From positions 124,001 through 188,000 of the IMG/VR virus record IMGVR_UViG_3300041411_000129: DNA of 64,000 bases, one strand, 5' to 3'. The translations under genes were made by a program, and so were the position numbers. The notes beneath the pieces were generated by a model, which ran no database searches, had not been told where the DNA came from, and was given only the letters and a program-made list of their open reading frames with translations. Shown piece after piece: positions 7,963-63,390 of this stretch (position 1 is its first letter; every line of letters begins with the position of its first letter).

Positions 7963-8003
7963 GTGATACAGGGTCTAACAGCCTTGTATCACGGGCTTTA
8001 TGC
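7963..8003 (+). terminator. Hairpin followed by TTTATGC
   Basis: GTGATACAGGG...CCTTGTATCAC, then GGGCTTTATGC. Confidence 0.6.
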
Positions 8004-8027
8004 CGCCTTAACGTAAAAATACACAGG

Positions 8028-8037
8028 CATACATTAC
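8028..8037 (+). promoter_or_regulatory. Putative phage early promoter motif (CATACATTAC)
   Basis: Intergenic ACATTAC shared with five other intergenic sites; resembles the phiKZ early TATTAC consensus. Confidence 0.6.
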
Positions 8038-13007: not shown

Positions 13008-13035
13008 GTGTTTACCTATAAAAGTCTTGAGTTAT

Positions 13036-13042
13036 ACATTAC
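13036..13042 (+). promoter_or_regulatory. Putative early promoter motif (ACATTAC)
   Basis: Intergenic, 43 nt upstream of the nvRNAP beta-C gene. Confidence 0.6.
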
Positions 13043-17287: not shown

Positions 17288-17318
17288 CATACTGGCGGAG
17301 GAAACTCCGCCTTTATGC
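17288..17318 (+). terminator. Hairpin with CATA/TTTATGC flanks
   Basis: GGCGGAG-GAAA-CTCCGCC-TTTATGC. Confidence 0.7.
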
Positions 17319-17343
17319 CCCACTTTATAAGAAGGAGGCCGTA

Positions 17344-20096: not shown

Positions 20097-20141
20097 CATA
20101 AAGCCCGGCATTGAGCCGGGCTTTATGTCACTCTTTTTTTT
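20097..20141. terminator. Bidirectional terminator at a convergent junction
   Basis: CATAAAGCCCGGC-ATTGA-GCCGGGCTTTATG, then a T run. Confidence 0.85.
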
Positions 20142-27004: not shown

Positions 27005-27038
27005 GCATAAAGGGCGGGGTAATCCCCGCCCTTTATGC
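27005..27038. terminator. Bidirectional terminator (perfect 15-bp inverted repeat)
   Basis: GCATAAAGGGCGGGG-TAAT-CCCCGCCCTTTATGC. Confidence 0.85.
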
Positions 27039-27043
27039 CCTTA

Positions 27044-40374: not shown

Positions 40375-40403
40375 GTACGGCGGGGCTTCGGCCCCGCTGT
40401 ATG
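40375..40403 (+). terminator. Hairpin with TGTATGC tail
   Basis: GCGGGGC-TTCG-GCCCCGC-TGTATGC. Confidence 0.65.
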
Positions 40404-40463
40404 CCGCGTTTATGATATAGCTTCCGCTATTAACGCCATCTCTCTGTGCAACGGGTGATAACA

Positions 40464-45642: not shown

Positions 45643-47047
45643 GTTAGATTCGTCCCCGATTGCCCAAGAGGTCGCCCTCATCGTTAAGGAAGGTGGTAGT
45701 CCTTACTTCTTGTTCGCAGTGACCATCCATTGCGGCGGTAAAGACATTACCCCTCTCCAAGTGTTGAGGTTTGACGTTGGGCGCAACTACCGTGGCGCTT
45801 ACACGGATGACCTGTCCATCGTGGTGTCACTCGGCACCGGTACATTGATGAATGACATTGGTCCGTATCAAGACGACATCAAGATCACCGTCAACATCTC
45901 CAACGCCGATACAACCGGTACTCAGAAGACCGATCAGGCGGTGATGTCCAGAACGTACGTTGCGTATCTGGGTGATGAGATCCCACGCCCAACTGATACA
46001 GCGTTCAACCCATCGCTGCAAGATACTGAGACGGCTAACCGTAGTTCCCTCAAGAACACGACGTTTGTGTTGGAGATGGCAGCGGTCGGTCAGCTCAGGA
46101 AACAAAGTCTCGGCACGATCGGTAAAGCATGCCCTCCTTACGAGCTCATGCGTACGCTGATGACGAAGGCGTGTCAAGCGTTGAAGTTGGGTAAGGATGA
46201 AGTCATCGACAAGTTCGATATGGCTGATGCCAACAACCTGACAGCGCGTGACCACGTCATCGTTCCGGATAACACTCCTGTCTTGGAGATCCCTGATTAC
46301 ATCCAGAACAAATCTGGTGGGATCTACTCGACAGGTCTTGGGTTCTATATCCAAGGACAGTGTCTGTTCACATGGCCGATGTACGATACAACCCGTCAAG
46401 ATTCCGCTAAACGTGTGTTGCAGGTTGTGATGGCTCCTAGTCGTCACTCTACGATGCTCGATAAGACGTGGAGAGATGGTGGGCGGATGGTCAGCATTTA
46501 CTCGGCTGGTATTTCTAAGATCCTCGATGATTCGTTGGGTCAGTTGAATACCCAAGGTAACGCCGTTCGTTACACCAACGCCAATCAGTTGGTGGACGGT
46601 GGTCCTAAAGTTGCTGGCAACAAGATGGTGGCGTCTCGTACGACCAACAACCAAGAGTTCTCAACCACGGTTGTAGGTAACGGACAGAACCTCGCTAAAG
46701 CCGCTGGATCGAAAGTAACTGATAACGTGTACTTGGAGGCCAGTAAGCTGGCGAAACGTTCAGGTGCGCACATGGTGATCCCTTGGAAGCGAAGTAACCC
46801 AGAGCTTATCACTCCGGGTATGGCTACTGAGATCAACTACGATCACGATGGCGTTATAAGGACAATCGAAGGTACTGTGATTTCATGCTACAGTTCTTAC
46901 GAGCTGGAAGGTCAAGGTATGAACGCAGCACGATGGATGGCTTCATCTGTCGTAACGGTCTTCATTGATCGGAATGATCCTGACTATATCGCTTACCTAC
47001 AAGGTGGCGGTACGATCAGTGCCGTTCCAGAGATCGGTGAGATCTAA
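45632..47047 (+). CDS. Virion protein, probable baseplate hub/tail-tip component
   Basis: 471 aa; YIQNKSGGIYSTGLGFY block; hub assignment is inferred. Confidence 0.65.
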   Translation: MAVELDSSPIAQEVALIVKEGGSPYFLFAVTIHCGGKDITPLQVLRFDVGRNYRGAYTDDLSIVVSLGTGTLMNDIGPYQDDIKITVNISNADTTGTQKTDQAVMSRTYVAYLGDEIPRPTDTAFNPSLQDTETANRSSLKNTTFVLEMAAVGQLRKQSLGTIGKACPPYELMRTLMTKACQALKLGKDEVIDKFDMADANNLTARDHVIVPDNTPVLEIPDYIQNKSGGIYSTGLGFYIQGQCLFTWPMYDTTRQDSAKRVLQVVMAPSRHSTMLDKTWRDGGRMVSIYSAGISKILDDSLGQLNTQGNAVRYTNANQLVDGGPKVAGNKMVASRTTNNQEFSTTVVGNGQNLAKAAGSKVTDNVYLEASKLAKRSGAHMVIPWKRSNPELITPGMATEINYDHDGVIRTIEGTVISCYSSYELEGQGMNAARWMASSVVTVFIDRNDPDYIAYLQGGGTISAVPEIGEI

Positions 47048-47062
47048 CAATCCCATAGTCAC

Positions 47063-47069
47063 ACATTAC
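47063..47069 (+). promoter_or_regulatory. Putative early promoter motif (GTCACACATTAC)
   Basis: Intergenic ACATTAC with the extended GTCAC prefix seen at other copies. Confidence 0.6.
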
Positions 47070-48525: not shown

Positions 48526-48530
48526 CACGA

Positions 48531-48577
48531 CATAAAGCCCGGCATTACGCCGGGCTTTATGCTCACTCTTTTTTTTT
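48531..48577. terminator. Bidirectional terminator at a convergent junction
   Basis: CATAAAGCCCGGC-ATTAC-GCCGGGCTTTATG plus a T run; near-identical to 20097-20141. Confidence 0.85.
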
Positions 48578-54308: not shown

Positions 54309-54761
54309 ATGCTACTGGATGTCAAAGGCGACATGTTCAAACGCGCCCCAAAGGGATCGTTAGTCGGCATTCCCGTTAATACCGTCGGAGTAGGCGGGAA
54401 GGGTCTGGCGTGTCTAATGAAGCTGCGTTGGCCAGAGGCGTACAAGAAGTATTGCAAAGATTGTAGACGCGGTAGGATCGCATCAGGAGAGCTCTGCGTG
54501 TATGACGTAGGGGACTATCGTCTCGCTATGCTACCAACTAAGTACTACTGGGGTAATCCTTCCGATAAAGGCCTGATCACAATCACGGCTAAAAGACTCC
54601 TTGCCTACATGGAAGGTACGTTCGAGGAAGATTGCTACATCCCTCAACTCGGATGTGGTGATAAGACTGGAACGTTGGATTATGAAGTTGATGTTCGCCC
54701 TATCCTCGAAGAAGTGTTTGGCGAGGCTGGCGAAACCATTCACGTATTCGATTGGAGCTGA
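54309..54761 (+). CDS. Macrodomain ADP-ribosylhydrolase, DarG-like
   Basis: GDMF, PVNTVGVGGKGLA, LPTKYYW and IPQLGCG motifs. Confidence 0.88.
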   Translation: MLLDVKGDMFKRAPKGSLVGIPVNTVGVGGKGLACLMKLRWPEAYKKYCKDCRRGRIASGELCVYDVGDYRLAMLPTKYYWGNPSDKGLITITAKRLLAYMEGTFEEDCYIPQLGCGDKTGTLDYEVDVRPILEEVFGEAGETIHVFDWS

Positions 54762-55393: not shown

Positions 55394-55428
55394 GCATACA
55401 TCGCCCGGCCTTGAGCCGGGCTTTATGC
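55394..55428 (+). terminator. Hairpin with CATA/TTTATGC flanks
   Basis: GCCCGGC-CTTGA-GCCGGGC-TTTATGC. Confidence 0.7.
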
Positions 55429-55448
55429 TGCAATCGTAGTCAAAGAAT

Positions 55449-55508: not shown

Positions 55509-55604
55509 ATGGCAAACTTTGCCCGTGCTGTAGCCGTCGGTGTAACCGTCGTCGTAGTATCGCAAATCATCCTTCGCCAGCTTTCCAAGCGCGGCTACAT
55601 CTAA
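55509..55604 (+). CDS. 31-aa single-TM microprotein (not in the ORF track)
   Basis: GGAG RBS; MANFARAVAVGVTVVVVSQIILRQLSKRGYI. Confidence 0.7.
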   Translation: MANFARAVAVGVTVVVVSQIILRQLSKRGYI

Positions 55605-55635
55605 CCCCAATTCTAACGACCGAGGAGGTCTAATC

Positions 55636-55755
55636 ATGAAACAGAAACCACGCGAAATCCGAATCTACTTCCGCGGTCAAGTCGCCCTCGATATTCGAGA
55701 CAGACTCATCTTGGCGCAAATCACCACCCCGGTAAAGACTAAGGATTCGAAATGA
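55636..55755 (+). CDS. 39-aa basic microprotein (not in the ORF track)
   Basis: GAGGAGG RBS; MKQKPREIRIYFRGQVALDIRDRLILAQITTPVKTKDSK; ATGA overlap with the next ORF. Confidence 0.7.
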   Translation: MKQKPREIRIYFRGQVALDIRDRLILAQITTPVKTKDSK

Positions 55756-55880
55756 AACAGTTTAAACTCGTACTGGCTGGCATGATTCTGAGCATTGGCA
55801 TTTCGACTGCTTACTCTTCAGGTATCTTCGATGAAGCTGGTCAGTACAAGGCGCAACACGCAGCATTCGCAGCGCAGTAA
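55752..55880 (+). CDS. 42-aa signal-peptide/membrane microprotein (not in the ORF track)
   Basis: MKQFKLVLAGMILSIGISTAYSSGIFDEAGQYKAQHAAFAAQ; AAGGA RBS. Confidence 0.65.
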   Translation: MKQFKLVLAGMILSIGISTAYSSGIFDEAGQYKAQHAAFAAQ

Positions 55881-55906
55881 TTTATTGCAATCTAAAAAGA
55901 TTGACT

Positions 55907-55916
55907 GACACATTAC
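55907..55916 (+). promoter_or_regulatory. Putative early promoter motif (GACACATTAC)
   Basis: Intergenic ACATTAC copy. Confidence 0.55.
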
Positions 55917-57817: not shown

Positions 57818-57848
57818 CATAAGGCCCGGCTTCGGCCGGGCTCTATGC
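57818..57848 (+). terminator. Hairpin with CATA/TATGC flanks
   Basis: CATAAGGCCCGGC-TTCG-GCCGGGCTCTATG. Confidence 0.75.
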
Positions 57849-57858
57849 CGTCAACTAA

Positions 57859-57876
57859 TTTACGGTCACACATTAC
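57859..57876 (+). promoter_or_regulatory. Putative early promoter motif (TTTACGGTCACACATTAC)
   Basis: Intergenic, about 40 nt upstream of the AmrZ-like gene. Confidence 0.6.
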
Positions 57877-57917
57877 CCACTCGTCACTTAACCATTAATC
57901 AAGATCGGAGTTACCGC

Positions 57918-58310
57918 ATGAAACCTTTGAAACAAGCAATCTATTCTTCGCGTTCGGCTGATAAGTTCGTAGTTCGTCTTCCAGACGGCATGCGTGAAAA
58001 GATCGCTGATGTTGCTCGTGGTCACCACCGCAGCATGAACTCTGAAATCATCGCACGACTCGAAGCGTCGTTGATGGCTGAAGGGCACATTGATGTGGAA
58101 GAGGGTGAACTGGAAGCATTGCCACCTGAAGGTTGGATGCCGGGTATTGGTCAATTTGTTTATAAGAAAGCCGGTGGTAAGAAAATCTACGGAACCATCA
58201 AAGCAATTTATATCAACGAGCTGGGTGAGATGTCAGCCAAGGTCACTAACGATCTACTGGGCAACTTCACCGAAATGCTGAAGCTCTTACGTCCTGTCAT
58301 CCTGAAGTAA
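57918..58310 (+). CDS. amrZ: AmrZ/AlgZ-like Arc-family ribbon-helix-helix regulator with a replaced C-terminal domain
   Basis: [52 protein letters not shown] closely matches the Pseudomonas AmrZ N-terminal DNA-binding domain; GGAG RBS. Confidence 0.9.
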
Positions 58311-58363: not shown

Positions 58364-58681
58364 ATGAGTCTTAAAGCCCGCGACTTCTTCAACATCTACT
58401 GGATGCACCCGATCCCAGGTGTGTACATCAGCTTTGAAGAATCCACCGAAGCCGCTGAGCCGCCTGAGCCGAATCAAGTTCCTACGCACAGCGTAGAAGT
58501 TCTGGTCGACGTGTGCGGTATGCAGCGCCAGCTGTCTGGCTCCATGGCGGTATCGTGGAGTGAGGCTGAATTCGCTAAGCACAACTCGGCTGACTTCACG
58601 AACATCGTGAACAACGCCATCAGCGATAAACTCCTCCCGTACGTGAAGATCGTCGGCAGCGTGACTATCGCCAAATTGTAA
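58364..58681 (+). CDS. Hypothetical protein
   Basis: 105 aa; high-expression codon usage; ends at a terminator. Confidence 0.75.
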   Translation: MSLKARDFFNIYWMHPIPGVYISFEESTEAAEPPEPNQVPTHSVEVLVDVCGMQRQLSGSMAVSWSEAEFAKHNSADFTNIVNNAISDKLLPYVKIVGSVTIAKL

Positions 58682-58697
58682 TTGCAGCAAACATGAC

Positions 58698-58733
58698 GCC
58701 CCACTTCGGTGGGGCTTTGTGTTCTTTCTTTTT
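58698..58733 (+). terminator. Intrinsic terminator
   Basis: GCCCCAC-TTCG-GTGGGGC, then a T-rich tract. Confidence 0.75.
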
Positions 58734-58749
58734 ATTAAGGGGCGGCCAA

Positions 58750-59199
58750 ATGTCCACAATCCACGTTAAAGATGTCAAACGCATCAAAGGTCCTAATGTC
58801 GAATCATTAGACCGATTTGTTATCGCAGGTCAGGCTCCTATCAGGGTTACTATCCTACCAGGCCTTGATCTCATCATAGATGGCGACAAAGAACTGTGTG
58901 CGGAAGATGTATCCGGTTTCGTAACCGTTCACTTCAATCGTGACAGTCAAGGAATCGGTATCGGCACTATCTATTTCAGGCTGGAATCTCGTTACTACAG
59001 CTGTCCTGAAACCAAATCCCTGCTGCACGGACCAACACTCTGCAAACTCATCGCAGAGTATCTCCATCGTAACTTCAAGGTGGATATAGGTCTTGGCTAT
59101 CTAGTCGAAGACTGGAAGGTCGGCGGTCGTATCTCCGCCCGTGGTCATTCCGATGGCCGTGGCGACATCCTTTACTATACTGGCAATCGTTGCAAATAG
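58750..59199 (+). CDS. Hypothetical protein
   Basis: ATG 58750 after AAGGGG; 149 aa. Confidence 0.7.
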   Translation: MSTIHVKDVKRIKGPNVESLDRFVIAGQAPIRVTILPGLDLIIDGDKELCAEDVSGFVTVHFNRDSQGIGIGTIYFRLESRYYSCPETKSLLHGPTLCKLIAEYLHRNFKVDIGLGYLVEDWKVGGRISARGHSDGRGDILYYTGNRCK

Positions 59200-59208
59200 G
59201 AGTTGTAC

Positions 59209-60852
59209 ATGTTTCTGAATGAAGTGGATCAAATCCAACACAACCTCTACTCCAAGCTCATGGAACAGGGTTATCTGAAAGGCGACCGGACAGGTGTAGG
59301 CACCCTCATGCTGCCGGGTCTGGTAATGAACTACGATATCAGCGATAAACGTATCCCGCTGCCGTCGACCAAAGAAGTCTTCAACAAGTCGTGGGGCATC
59401 GAGAACCTGATGTTCATCTCGGGTTCCAGCAACATCAAGTTCCTGAAAGACAACAACGTGTCGATCTGGGATAACTGGTTCATGCCAGGCACTGCGGTTT
59501 ACGACGAACCGAAGCGCGTTCCTTACACTCTGGATGAACGCATTCAAGTCGCTGTGGACACGGGTCATCGTCAGGCGATCCTCGATCACGTTACTGCGTT
59601 CAAGCTCAATTCGAAAAGCATCGGCAGTGGCTGCATCGTTGTTCAAGACGAGAACGGCGATCTGGTGGAGTTCTTCAATCTTACTTTCACGTATTACGGT
59701 GAGCTGATTGGATATCTCGATGGTCTCGGAATTCCAACCCATAATGAAAATGGTGGTGGTAAGCCGGTCGGCATTCAGACTCGTCTGAAACGTGTTGCGA
59801 AGAATCAGTCTGCTTGCTGGGAAGCTATCAACGCTATCGTCTTCAACTTCGGTGATGAAGTCGCCGCAGGCGATAAGCCGTACAAGGTCGTTGTCTTCCA
59901 TAACGGCAAGTTTGTTGACGTCGAGATCAGTCAGAAGAAAGTCGCAGCTATTCAGGCTGTGATGGATACCTTTGATATTCCGAAGTATCCTCTGTTGGAA
60001 GCTGATATCGGTCAGGGTAGCTACGGCGTTCAGTGGCGGCGGTGGCAGGATACGCAGATTGTTGACTGCATGTATGACGACGCTACATTCAAGCAGTACG
60101 AAGCTCAGGGCTACACGTTCAAGGGTAATCTGGATTACGGCCCGGATGAAGATCGCATGAAGTGTGTCTTCCATCGCGATATCGACCAGTTGCAGAACTG
60201 CATCGATATGTTGCGCAAGAACCCTGACGATCGCCGCATGATCGTTAACGCATGGAACCCAGGTCGTACATGGCAAGCTGCTTTGCCTCCGTGCCATCTG
60301 TACTTCCAGTTCATCAGCTATCCGAAGACTGCCGGTCAGATCCTCGACGATCTCGAGAAAGCGGGCATGCTGCAAAGCCTGCGTCAAGCGATCTCCGAAG
60401 ATTACGGCACTCACGTAATCGAAACTGTTCAAAGCTTCGAGAAGAAGTACGAAGAAGATGAAGAGTTCTACGGTTACGTGAAGCGTTTCTGTGAGCATGC
60501 GGTAGTAGGCGTTAATCCACGCCTCATATCCACGCTGATGGTAATGCGCTCCAACGACTACGCTCTGGGCATGCCGTTCAACGTAGCGCAGTATGCGGCC
60601 TTGACGCACATGGTTGCACACGTCACCGGCCACGATACTGACCGTCTGATCGTTGTAGGTGGTGATTGCCACCTGTACGTGAATCAGCTGGAAGGTATCA
60701 GCAAACAGTTGGCGCGTACTTCTACGGAAGAGAGTGATCCTCGGTTCATTATCAAACGTAAGATCGCCGAGATTGATGACTTCACTTTCGAAGACTTCAA
60801 AATCGAAGGCTATCTGCCGCAGCCAAACATCCCAATGCCTGTCGCGGTGTAA
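59209..60852 (+). CDS. thyA: Thymidylate synthase with large insertions
   Basis: DRTGVGT, TKEV, IWDNW, YGVQWRRW, DRRMIVNAWNP, ALPPCH (catalytic Cys), RSND..LGMPFN and DCHLY. Confidence 0.95.
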   Translation: MFLNEVDQIQHNLYSKLMEQGYLKGDRTGVGTLMLPGLVMNYDISDKRIPLPSTKEVFNKSWGIENLMFISGSSNIKFLKDNNVSIWDNWFMPGTAVYDEPKRVPYTLDERIQVAVDTGHRQAILDHVTAFKLNSKSIGSGCIVVQDENGDLVEFFNLTFTYYGELIGYLDGLGIPTHNENGGGKPVGIQTRLKRVAKNQSACWEAINAIVFNFGDEVAAGDKPYKVVVFHNGKFVDVEISQKKVAAIQAVMDTFDIPKYPLLEADIGQGSYGVQWRRWQDTQIVDCMYDDATFKQYEAQGYTFKGNLDYGPDEDRMKCVFHRDIDQLQNCIDMLRKNPDDRRMIVNAWNPGRTWQAALPPCHLYFQFISYPKTAGQILDDLEKAGMLQSLRQAISEDYGTHVIETVQSFEKKYEEDEEFYGYVKRFCEHAVVGVNPRLISTLMVMRSNDYALGMPFNVAQYAALTHMVAHVTGHDTDRLIVVGGDCHLYVNQLEGISKQLARTSTEESDPRFIIKRKIAEIDDFTFEDFKIEGYLPQPNIPMPVAV

Positions 60853-63124: not shown

Positions 63125-63357
63125 GTAAGACAGCTCAACGAAATCGCCAGCTTTACGCCTACGGATACAGAGTCGGACTCGGTAAAGAGAAGTTCGATTG
63201 GACTAGACGTGCGCGTAAGGTGGGGTGGGAAGCATTCGATCGCGGCAAGGCTGCTGGTAAAGCAGAGAAGCTTCGACGCCAACAGCTTAATGCTAATCCA
63301 TGGCTTGACTTCAAACGGTGGGTTAAACGCGTCTTCCGTAACTTGATAAAACGATAA
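63121..63357 (+). CDS. Small basic hypothetical protein
   Basis: ATGA-coupled; 78 aa. Confidence 0.7.
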   Translation: MSKTAQRNRQLYAYGYRVGLGKEKFDWTRRARKVGWEAFDRGKAAGKAEKLRRQQLNANPWLDFKRWVKRVFRNLIKR

Positions 63358-63360
63358 CAG

Positions 63361-63390
63361 CATACAGCCGGGGCAATCCCCGGCTTTGTG
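63361..63390 (+). terminator. Hairpin terminator
   Basis: CATACA-GCCGGGG-CAAT-CCCCGGC-TTTGTG. Confidence 0.65.

What the first reader, a model, noticed from the sequence alone, without database searches (positions are those of the whole stretch)
57859..58310. Jumbo phage carries a captured host AmrZ DNA-binding domain fused to a foreign C-terminal domain, behind an early-type promoter
Seen: the first ~56 aa are [56 protein letters not shown], preceded by an ACATTAC motif. Known: Pseudomonas AmrZ (AlgZ) is a ribbon-helix-helix global regulator of alginate, flagella/pili, biofilm and c-di-GMP. It also represses type I-F CRISPR-Cas, and AmrZ homologs on temperate phages and mobile elements can do the same. 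From memory this N-terminus differs from fluorescens-group AmrZ at only a handful of positions, but the helical tetramerisation C-domain is replaced by a beta-rich segment ([29 protein letters not shown]). Inference: this early lytic-phage chimera may hijack the AmrZ regulon, silencing cas genes or receptors (pili/flagella, i.e. superinfection control), or may heterodimerise with host AmrZ and poison it. The KQAIYSS variant also points to a non-aeruginosa Pseudomonas host.
Basis: partly seen in the sequence, partly recalled or inferred. Interest (0 to 1): 0.85.

Follow-up and report, generated by a model that had tools for sequence, protein, structure and literature searches.

The report
Jumbo-phage AmrZ-like early regulator
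An uncultivated phiKZ-like giant phage carries a small DNA-binding protein whose front half copies the Pseudomonas master regulator AmrZ and whose back half is a phage-specific small beta-barrel; such phage AmrZ look-alikes are already published, so this is a new member of a known kind.

Summary
ORF 57918-58310 (+) encodes 130 aa. Residues 1-58 match P. aeruginosa AmrZ (PDB 3qoq, E=7e-23) and are 79-86% identical to cellular Pseudomonas AmrZ, against E~0.2 for P22 Arc and Mnt. All AmrZ base-contact residues are kept.

The C-terminal half is not AmrZ's tetramerisation domain. It is a confidently predicted SH3/Tudor-like barrel.

The window is a phiKZ-like jumbo phage (nvRNAP gp71 homologue; 253,921-bp metagenomic contig).

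The interpretation needs trimming. This is not a one-off chimera. The same two-domain architecture occurs in dozens of 230-310-kb viral contigs and in 93-kb Samunavirus phages. SM1 gp115 corresponds to PhiPA1019 Gp53, an early protein shown to bind the fleQ, pslA, amrZ and ftsZ promoters. Phage AmrZ homologues, including jumbo phage PaBG's, were shown in 2019-2020 to work in the AmrZ network and repress type I-F CRISPR-Cas.

Codon usage and a poorly resolved tree argue against recent capture from a host.

An early promoter is plausible. The A/T box plus ACATTAC is conserved in a diverged relative and also precedes the nvRNAP gene.

Verdict: new member of a known kind, moderate interest. The uncharacterised C-domain is the only new angle.

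The parts
57818..57847 (.). Palindromic G+C-rich stem-loop (CATAAGGCCCGGC / GCCGGGCTCTATG). It is a bidirectional intrinsic terminator that closes the upstream gene, and one of at least 16 similar elements in the window.
   Evidence: The hairpin and the CTCTATG tail are also present upstream of the orthologues in L008 and L014.
57853..57876 (+). Candidate phage-RNAP promoter of probable early class: an A/T box AACTAATTT (57853-57861), an 8-nt spacer, then ACATTAC (57870-57876).
   Evidence: The same bipartite layout occurs at four other intergenic + strand sites: 8031, 13036, 47063 and 55910. The 13036 site precedes the PHIKZ071 nvRNAP homologue. Five of the 11 ACATTAC copies lie in the 8.8% of the window that is non-coding (binomial p=0.0015). 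The block is conserved in L008 and in L014, whose proteins are only about 50% identical.
57907..57910 (+). Shine-Dalgarno GGAG, 7 nt before the ATG.
   Evidence: Sequence read directly.
57918..58310 (+). CDS of the 130-aa AmrZ-like two-domain protein.
   Evidence: identical gene call on the source contig.
57918..58085 (+). [quoted passage not shown] The base-contact residues K16, V18 and R20 and the extended N-terminus residue R12 are kept.
   Evidence: Residue roles come from PMC3325190. R20, R26, M40 and N41 correspond to the residues whose mutation abolished DNA binding in Gp53.
58086..58130 (+). Acidic linker with low structural confidence (residues 57-71).
   Evidence: pLDDT is 54-58 in this stretch and drops below 50 at residues 61-64. 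Length and sequence vary among homologues.
58131..58307 (+). C-terminal SH3/Tudor-like beta-barrel (residues 72-130) with the conserved signature W73-x-P75-x-x-G78-x-x-V81 ... I94 ... P126.
   Evidence: AF2 pLDDT is 83-96. Foldseek against the PDB gives target-normalised TM-scores of 0.72-0.78 to Tudor domains and R67 DHFR, with E-values of only 0.002-0.06. Conservation is shown. Homology to the C-domain of SM1 gp115 has hhalign probability 96.4% and E=1.2e-9.

Best explanation
The gene encodes a phage copy of the Pseudomonas global regulator AmrZ. It is probably transcribed early from a phage-RNAP promoter.

The proposed mechanism has three steps.
1. Its ribbon-helix-helix domain forms dimers. 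This step is inferred from the fold.
2. It keeps every AmrZ base-contact residue, so it should recognise the same GGC half-sites as host AmrZ on the host chromosome. Likely targets are AmrZ-controlled promoters such as fleQ, psl, amrZ and diguanylate cyclase genes, and possibly ftsZ or cas. The residue conservation is shown here. The binding is inferred from experiments on homologues.
3. The SH3/Tudor-like C-domain replaces AmrZ's helical tetramerisation domain. It most likely supplies the dimer-dimer contacts needed for cooperative binding. This is inferred from position and fold only.

The net effect would be rewiring of host motility, biofilm, c-di-GMP and cell-division programmes during infection.
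For: - The RHH domain matches AmrZ far better than Arc or Mnt (E=6.7e-23 against ~0.2) and is 79-86% identical to cellular AmrZ.
- K16, V18, R20 and R12 correspond to AmrZ K18, V20, R22 and R14, which specify the GGC half-sites (PMC3325190). They are invariant in the family.
- Phage AmrZ homologues, including the one from lytic jumbo phage PaBG, complemented a PA14 amrZ deletion and repressed Csy expression (bioRxiv 10.1101/673095).
- PhiPA1019 Gp53 is a 126-aa RHH protein from a 94-kb phage. Its mutated residues R15, R21, M35 and N36 fit SM1 gp115 numbering exactly. It is expressed early and binds and represses fleQ, pslA, amrZ and ftsZ (PMC13650114).
- SM1 gp115 shares both domains with the window protein.
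- The RHH domain is held at 77-95% identity among phage homologues whose C-domains are only 17-33% identical. This suggests constraint from a shared host target.
- The promoter block is conserved in a relative with ~50% protein identity. It is shared with the homologue of the phiKZ early nvRNAP gene (PMC4666361).
- The gene is intact and present on at least 6 contigs from independent samples.
Against: - No experiment exists on this protein, its host or its timing.
- The host is unknown.
- If the phage is nucleus-forming it may shut down or degrade the host chromosome early. That would limit the value of a host-transcription regulator.
- Gp53 and AmrZ were reported as functionally non-equivalent (PMC13650114), so an identical regulon is not guaranteed.
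- The syntenic orthologue P0127 in a related 240-kb phage has an RHH only 50% identical to the window's. Near-identity to AmrZ is therefore not obligatory for the gene's role in this phage lineage.
- The oligomerisation role of the C-domain rests on fold analogy only. The Foldseek E-values are weak.
- The ACATTAC core also resembles the phiKZ middle-promoter motif AAanTTACc, so the early class is not certain.
Confidence: 0.6

Rival explanations
1. Dominant-negative poison. The near-identical RHH domain co-folds with host AmrZ monomers into mixed dimers. These carry one helical and one SH3-like tail and cannot form proper tetramers, so host AmrZ is inactivated rather than mimicked.
For: RHH dimers are intertwined and form through the very domain that is 79-86% identical to the host's. 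AmrZ needs its C-terminal domain for tetramerisation and function (Xu et al. 2016, cited in PMC13650114). The phage C-domain is unrelated to it. Overexpressing amrZ did not rescue the Gp53 phenotypes.
Against: Five of six phage homologues complemented an amrZ deletion, which means they act as AmrZ rather than against it. Gp53 binds DNA on its own in EMSA and DAP-seq.
Confidence: 0.12
2. Regulator of the phage's own transcription. As with P22 Arc and Mnt, the RHH protein binds operators in phage DNA, for example in its own leader, to autoregulate or to switch off early promoters.
For: Classical phage RHH proteins do this. GGC-N5(A/T-rich)-GCC has the amrZ1 half-site layout. It occurs 9 times in the window against 1.7+-1.3 expected, with 5 copies intergenic and one at 57839-57849 just upstream of the gene's promoter.
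Against: Those intergenic sites are the 3' arms and tails of palindromic terminators (GCATAAAG-stem-CTTTATGC), which explains the enrichment without any operator. Most such terminators end in GCT, not GCC. Self-regulation would not require keeping the RHH at 80-86% identity to host AmrZ across phages with highly diverged C-domains.
Confidence: 0.12
3. Dedicated anti-CRISPR by transcriptional repression. The protein exists mainly to shut off type I-F cas genes, as shown for amrZ from PaBG, phi3 and JBD68.
For: bioRxiv 10.1101/673095 shows repression of Csy by phage homologues, including PaBG's.
Against: If the phage shields its DNA in a phage nucleus as phiKZ does, DNA-targeting type I-F systems would pose little threat; this premise comes from general knowledge and no nucleus-shell gene was identified here. 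Repressing cas transcription after infection starts cannot remove pre-made Csy complexes. Many environmental Pseudomonas lack type I-F systems. The host is unknown.
Confidence: 0.06
4. RHH antitoxin or partition (ParG/omega-like) protein that is unrelated to host regulation.
For: PHROG matches include families labelled 'partition protein ATPase' and FitA-like RHH. A small gene of unknown function follows at 58364-58681.
Against: No ParA or toxin family is found in the neighbours. The downstream gene is not conserved as a pair: it is only 42% identical in L008, where neighbours are 80-97% identical, and it is absent in L014. The specific match is to AmrZ.
Confidence: 0.03

Closest known systems
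Pseudomonas AmrZ (AlgZ), PDB 3qoq
   Same: It shares the ribbon-helix-helix domain with an extended N-terminus. Identity is 79-86% over residues 1-56. K, V and R base-contact residues and R14 are kept, as are the helix-2 N-terminus and the equivalent of R28.
   Different: The C-terminal helical tetramerisation domain is absent and an SH3/Tudor-like barrel takes its place. The gene is phage-borne behind a phage-type promoter, not chromosomal. It lacks the 2-residue TP insertion of P. aeruginosa AmrZ, as do AmrZ proteins of other Pseudomonas species.
PhiPA1019 Gp53 / Samunavirus SM1 gp115 (126 aa; PMC13650114)
   Same: It has the same two-domain architecture. The RHH carries the same DNA-binding residues (window R20, R26, M40, N41 = Gp53 R15, R21, M35, N36). 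The C-domains are homologous (hhalign 96.4%, E=1.2e-9). It is a small gene in a block of hypothetical genes, and Gp53 was shown to be early.
   Different: Overall identity is only ~35%. The SM1 RHH is much more diverged from AmrZ. The phage is a 93-94-kb type that uses other transcription machinery. Identity between SM1 gp115 and Gp53 is inferred from length, genome size and residue numbering, not from a sequence I could read.
Mobile AmrZ homologues of Borges et al. (PaBG gp184, phi3, JBD68; bioRxiv 10.1101/673095)
   Same: They are phage-encoded AmrZ-type RHH proteins with the contact residues conserved. PaBG is also a lytic jumbo phage. PaBG gp184 aligns collinearly through the W-x-P-x-x-G region.
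   Different: C-domain homology to PaBG is not statistically supported (hhalign E=0.034). The temperate-phage homologues have other C-termini. The C-domain is not mentioned in that preprint's text.
P22 Arc / Mnt repressors
   Same: They share the Pfam family PF03869 and the RHH fold, and are phage-encoded.
   Different: Sequence similarity is only marginal (E~0.2). Arc and Mnt regulate phage operators. Mnt tetramerises through a C-terminal coiled coil, not a beta-barrel.
SH3-like small barrels (Tudor domains; R67 type II DHFR)
   Same: The fold of residues ~72-130 is the same, with target-normalised TM-scores of 0.72-0.78. R67 DHFR shows that such a barrel can assemble into homotetramers.
   Different: No significant sequence similarity. 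There is no aromatic cage and there are no DHFR active-site features that I could verify. This is a fold-level analogy only.

Membership tests
Arc/MetJ-type ribbon-helix-helix (Pfam PF03869 Arc) | Pfam model score above the curated cut-off | tested here: met
   79.7 bits against a cut-off of 20.4, E=1.4e-22, residues 11-58.
Arc/MetJ-type ribbon-helix-helix (Pfam PF03869 Arc) | Beta-strand then helix A then helix B topology | tested here: inconclusive
   The AF2 monomer predicts helices at 25-35 and 40-54. The N-terminal strand is not formed and pLDDT is 44-72, as expected for an obligate dimer modelled as a monomer.
AmrZ (Pseudomonas global regulator) | RHH specifically similar to AmrZ rather than to other Arc-family members | tested here: met
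   3qoq scores E=6.7e-23 against ~0.2 for Arc and Mnt. Identity to cellular AmrZ is 79-86%.
AmrZ (Pseudomonas global regulator) | Base-contact residues Lys18, Val20, Arg22 (and Arg14) that read GGC half-sites | tested here: met
   K16, V18, R20 and R12 are present and invariant in the family alignments. Their roles come from PMC3325190.
AmrZ (Pseudomonas global regulator) | C-terminal helical domain that mediates tetramerisation | tested here: not met
   Residues 57-130 do not align with the ...ERELLQRFRQL... tail of cellular AmrZ. They are predicted as a beta-barrel.
AmrZ (Pseudomonas global regulator) | Chromosomal core gene of Pseudomonas in its conserved locus | tested here: not met
   The gene sits in a 253,921-bp viral contig between phage genes. 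One cellular copy sits in a different neighbourhood, next to mgtE.
AmrZ (Pseudomonas global regulator) | Binds AmrZ operators and controls algD, fleQ, psl and c-di-GMP genes | not testable with these tools
   This needs EMSA, DAP-seq or RNA-seq.
Phage/MGE-borne AmrZ homologues (Borges et al.) | AmrZ-type RHH with conserved contact residues, encoded on a Pseudomonas mobile element | tested here: met
   A Pseudomonas host is inferred only from the AmrZ similarity and from the nearest phage relatives.
Phage/MGE-borne AmrZ homologues (Borges et al.) | Complements an amrZ deletion or represses type I-F cas expression | not testable with these tools
   This was shown for PaBG, phi3 and JBD68 only.
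Gp53 / SM1 gp115-type two-domain phage RHH regulators | N-terminal RHH plus a homologous W-x-P-x-x-G beta-barrel C-domain | tested here: met
   tblastn covers 97% of the query in Samunavirus-type phages. hhalign of the C-domain profile against SM1 gp115 gives probability 96.4% and E=1.2e-9.
Gp53 / SM1 gp115-type two-domain phage RHH regulators | Early expression | tested here: inconclusive
   The promoter motif is shared with the nvRNAP gene, which is early in phiKZ, and is conserved in L014. The core also resembles the phiKZ middle-promoter motif. No transcript data exist.
SH3/Tudor-like small beta-barrel fold | Five- to six-stranded barrel superimposable on known members | tested here: met
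   The AF2 domain model has pLDDT 87.3. TM-scores to ERCC6L2 Tudor and R67 DHFR are 0.63-0.65 normalised to the query and 0.72-0.75 normalised to the target. No Pfam family is significant.

The most novel reading that the evidence does not exclude
The SH3/Tudor-like C-domain is found almost only fused to AmrZ-type RHH domains in Pseudomonas-type phages, so it may be more than an oligomerisation module. In that reading it is an effector domain. It would turn the AmrZ copy into something host AmrZ cannot be: a dominant-negative partner that traps host AmrZ in non-tetramerising mixed dimers, or an adaptor that recruits another host or phage factor to AmrZ operators. The RHH would be held near-identical to the host protein by selection for co-folding with it.
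Probability: 0.15. Interest if true: 0.6.

Novelty: new member of a known kind. Interest (0 to 1): 0.35.

Why it matters
Phage copies of host master regulators are a documented way for phages to reprogramme Pseudomonas. They affect motility, biofilm, c-di-GMP, cell division and CRISPR expression.

This locus adds an uncultivated phiKZ-like lineage. Together with its relatives it shows that the AmrZ-type domain is held near-identical to the host protein across very divergent jumbo phages. It is always paired with a phage-specific small barrel that nobody has characterised.

That barrel is a concrete, cheap target for structural and oligomerisation work. It could explain why Gp53-type proteins behave differently from AmrZ.

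The conserved A/T-box plus ACATTAC element also gives a candidate promoter consensus for this phage clade.

Tried and rejected
- **Near-identical DNA in isolate phages:** none found (megablast).
- **Deep profile search with the C-domain alone:** the top long multi-stretch hits are WD40-repeat proteins that match the W-N-P-x-T-G-x-L motif. These are false positives. The true hits are RHH-fused proteins plus two stand-alone copies (P0142, P0159).
- **Pfam on the C-domain:** nothing significant.
- **ESM Atlas on the C-domain:** weak leads only (score 0.74).
- **Relatives of the diverged RHH of the syntenic orthologue P0127:** the search returned only itself.
- **AmrZ-operator-like GGC-N5-GCC sites:** they are enriched but explained by palindromic terminators, so I do not count them as operators.
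- **RHH-only tree (54 columns):** too poorly resolved to give a donor or a direction of transfer.
- **C-domain homology to PaBG gp184 and Noxifer gp106:** not demonstrable by hhalign.
- **IMG/VR scan with the C-domain alignment:** The scan was run with the full-length alignment instead.
- **Self-correction:** an early estimate that P0127's RHH was more diverged than its C-domain was wrong. Both are ~50% identical.
- **Operators' note about stop-codon read-through:** it does not apply, because the ORF is intact.

Full report
**What is there**

The region 57818-58310 holds a compact transcription unit on the + strand.
- A palindromic G+C-rich stem-loop at 57818-57847 ends the upstream gene.
- An A/T box AACTAATTT follows at 57853-57861, then an 8-nt spacer, then ACATTAC at 57870-57876.
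- GGAG lies at 57907-57910, and a 130-codon ORF runs from the ATG at 57918 to the stop at 58310.
- The public gene call on the source contig has the same ends.
- The ORF is intact, so the operators' remark about stop-codon read-through does not apply.

**Context**

- The window comes from a 253,921-bp metagenomic viral contig (JGI 3300041411).
- It encodes split multisubunit RNA-polymerase beta-like proteins. ORF 13085-15265 matches PHIKZ071 of the phiKZ non-virion RNAP (7ogp chain C) with E=4e-111.
- It also encodes a phiKZ-type DNA polymerase and virion proteins.
- No isolate phage is close at the DNA level. The best protein identities are 35-40%, to Pseudomonas jumbo phages.
- 'Jumbo phage' is therefore right, and the lineage is uncultivated.

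**The protein: N-domain**

- Residues 11-58 hit Pfam Arc (E=1.4e-22).
- Against all PDB sequences the best match by 20 orders of magnitude is P. aeruginosa AmrZ (3qoq, E=6.7e-23, residues 1-58). Arc and Mnt score E~0.2.
- Cellular Pseudomonas, Stutzerimonas and Aquipseudomonas AmrZ proteins (about 108 aa) are 79-86% identical. The match covers only the first 43-48% of the query.
- AmrZ reads two GGC half-sites with Lys18, Val20 and Arg22, and Arg14 matters at algD (PMC3325190). The equivalents K16, V18, R20 and R12 are present and invariant in the family.
The protein passes it: it groups with AmrZ.

**The protein: C-domain**

- Residues 57-130 do not align with the helical tail of cellular AmrZ.
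- AlphaFold2 with a 42-sequence family alignment gives a confident beta domain (pLDDT 83-92 for residues 70-130). The domain modelled alone gives pLDDT 87.3 and pTM 0.72.
- Foldseek against the PDB returns only SH3-like small barrels. These include the ERCC6L2, PHF1 and SMN Tudor domains, R67 type II DHFR and ribosomal eS4 KOW-like domains. Target-normalised TM-scores are about 0.7-0.78, and E-values are weak at 0.002-0.06.
- No Pfam family is significant.
- The conserved signature is W73-x-P75-x-x-G78-x-x-V81 ... I94 ... P126.

**It is a family, not a one-off chimera**

- A protein search found close copies at 76-89% identity on several contigs. It also found about 40 more two-domain proteins of 122-174 aa, many on 240-277-kb contigs.
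- IMG/VR holds 145 viral contigs with a relative, at least 20 of them 228-314 kb long.
- Among cultured phages, 93-kb Samunavirus-type P. aeruginosa phages (SM1, PaMx31, PA_L9, BHU-1 and others) match over 94-97% of the query at ~35% identity.
- The SM1 gp115 C-domain is homologous to the window's (hhalign 96.4%, E=1.2e-9).
- PaBG gp184 and Noxifer gp106 share the RHH and a collinear W/P/G pattern. Their C-domain homology is not statistically demonstrable.
- An exhaustive profile search with the C-domain alone found it almost only fused to this RHH, plus two stand-alone copies. The high-scoring long hits are WD40 false positives.

**Was the N-domain 'captured' from a host?**

Similarity at family level is unquestionable, but nothing points to a recent event in this phage.
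- The N-domain DNA is 71% identical to one cellular Pseudomonas-type amrZ, taken from a metagenomic contig, that is 86% identical in protein.
- Only 22 of 48 identical-residue codons use the same codon.
- GC3 is 0.47, phage-like or lower.
- In a tree of the RHH domain the cellular sequences cluster together. The window's clade joins other phage copies (P0013, P0015, P0024; support 90/87).
- The tree has only 54 columns, most forks are open and there is no root. The direction of transfer therefore cannot be decided.

The RHH evolves unlike the rest of the protein.
- Among family members the N-domain is 77-95% identical while the C-domain drops to 17-33%. This set was selected through N-domain words, which biases it.
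- The positional orthologue in a related 240-kb phage (P0127, locus L014) has the same gene order from the phiKZ inner-body genes to thymidylate synthase. Flanking proteins are 46-67% identical.
- In that orthologue both domains are ~50% identical to the window's (28/56 and 31/59).
- The window's RHH is thus closer to host AmrZ and to distant phages' copies than to its own positional orthologue.
- This fits selection that holds the domain to a host-defined target in Pseudomonas-infecting lineages, or past domain exchange. I cannot tell which.

**Promoter**

- By count alone ACATTAC is marginal: 11 copies against 5.8+-2.7 expected.
- Five of the 11 lie in the 8.8% of the window that is non-coding (p=0.0015). 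All five are on the + strand upstream of + genes.
- All five have an A-rich box 8-11 nt upstream: sites 8031, 13036, 47063, 55910 and 57870.
- Site 13036 precedes the PHIKZ071 homologue. The phiKZ nvRNAP subunits are early-gene products (PMC4666361).
- The block hairpin-CTCTATG-AACTAATTT-N8/9-ACATTAC is conserved upstream of the orthologue in L014, whose proteins are only about 50% identical.
- This is good evidence for a real promoter and fair evidence for the early class.
- One caveat: the core also resembles the phiKZ middle-promoter motif AAanTTACc.
- Gp53 of PhiPA1019 is early by RT-qPCR.

**Mechanism**

Published experiments on homologues carry the functional inference.
- Borges et al. 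(bioRxiv 10.1101/673095) found AmrZ homologues on 14 Pseudomonas mobile elements, including obligately lytic myoviruses. Five of six complemented an amrZ deletion. Three (PaBG, phi3, JBD68) repressed Csy expression.
- PMC13650114 shows that Gp53 is a 126-aa early RHH protein of a 94,085-bp phage. It binds and represses fleQ, pslA, amrZ and ftsZ, blocks division and motility, and is not functionally equivalent to AmrZ.
- The Gp53 mutant residue numbers R15, R21, M35 and N36 fit SM1 gp115 exactly. I therefore treat Gp53 as the Samunavirus member of this family. This is an inference, because I could not read the Gp53 sequence itself.

My best model is an early phage AmrZ mimic.
- It binds AmrZ-type operators on host DNA.
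- The barrel substitutes for AmrZ's tetramerisation domain. R67 DHFR shows that such barrels can tetramerise. This step is an analogy only.

The rivals are, in order:
1. Dominant-negative mixed dimers with host AmrZ.
2. Self-regulation of phage transcription.
3. Dedicated cas repression. From general knowledge, not from a tool result here, phiKZ-type phages shield their DNA from DNA-targeting CRISPR systems, which would make this a weak benefit. No nucleus-shell gene was identified in this work.
4. An antitoxin or partition role, which has no supporting neighbours.

The apparent AmrZ-operator-like sites, including one in the gene's own leader, are parts of palindromic terminators. I do not count them as evidence.

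**Host**

Nearly all phage copies carry that form, and the homologue from the P. aeruginosa phage PaBG also lacks the aeruginosa-specific insertion. Related proteins carry 'compost metagenome' labels, and Noxifer (P. fluorescens SBW25) came from compost. An environmental Pseudomonas host is plausible but unproven.

**Verdict**

This is a new, uncultivated member of an already described kind: phage-borne AmrZ homologues and Gp53-type RHH regulators. The one undescribed aspect is the conserved SH3/Tudor-like C-domain, together with the decoupled evolution of the two domains. Interest is moderate to low.

Noticed in passing
window, e.g. 2470-2497, 7980-8006, 17295-17321, 27005-27040, 40380-40407, 48530-48565, 55395-55431, 57818-57850, 63340-63370; minus-strand sites near 20100, 12620 and 3248: At least 16 intergenic palindromes of the form GCATAAAG + G/C stem-loop + CTTTATGC(C/T). 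They probably act as bidirectional intrinsic terminators. Their TATG tail coincides with the phiKZ late-promoter core (TATG, with G as +1), so they might double as terminator plus late promoter.
   Followed up: partly
window 8009-8037, 13014-13042, 47040-47069, 55888-55916, 57853-57876: Five intergenic + strand sites share an A-rich box, a 8-11 nt spacer, ACATTAC and often a downstream TAG. This is a candidate early-promoter consensus for this phage clade. One site precedes the nvRNAP beta-like gene.
   Followed up: partly
window 58364-59199 (two ORFs of 105 and 168 aa): The two genes just downstream of the AmrZ-like gene are only 42-48% identical between this phage and its close relative L008. 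Neighbouring genes are 80-97% identical. They are missing at that position in L014. This is a fast-evolving accessory hotspot with no family match.
   Followed up: partly
window 59203-60852: The thymidylate synthase is about 547-549 aa. The Pfam domain is split, and profile positions 4-154 are spread over about 360 residues, which implies an insertion of roughly 200 aa. The insertion is conserved in L008 and L014 (542-550 aa).
   Followed up: no
window 54309-54761: A 150-aa protein gives a marginal Macro-domain match (ADP-ribose binding or hydrolase; Pfam E=1.4e-4). It is conserved in L008 and L014, in the same block of small genes next to divergently oriented phiKZ inner-body protein genes.
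   Followed up: no
window about 55509-55880 (L004:1592-1963): Three tandem micro-ORFs of 31, 39 and 42 aa are called in all related contigs. The 31-aa product is 97% identical in L008 and 48% in L014, which suggests real small proteins.
   Followed up: no
L014:6001-6411 (protein P0127), 240,166-bp contig: The positional orthologue of the AmrZ-like gene in a related jumbo phage keeps the K/V/R contact residues. Its RHH is only 50% identical to the window's and has no close relatives in a word-based search. This phage lineage may have drifted away from AmrZ mimicry.
   Followed up: partly
L027-L044 and similar (IMG/VR contigs of 12-15 kb): Many short predicted viral contigs carry an AmrZ N-domain match (80-86% identity) right at a contig end. 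They look like small integrated elements lying next to the host amrZ gene rather than phage-encoded copies.
   Followed up: no
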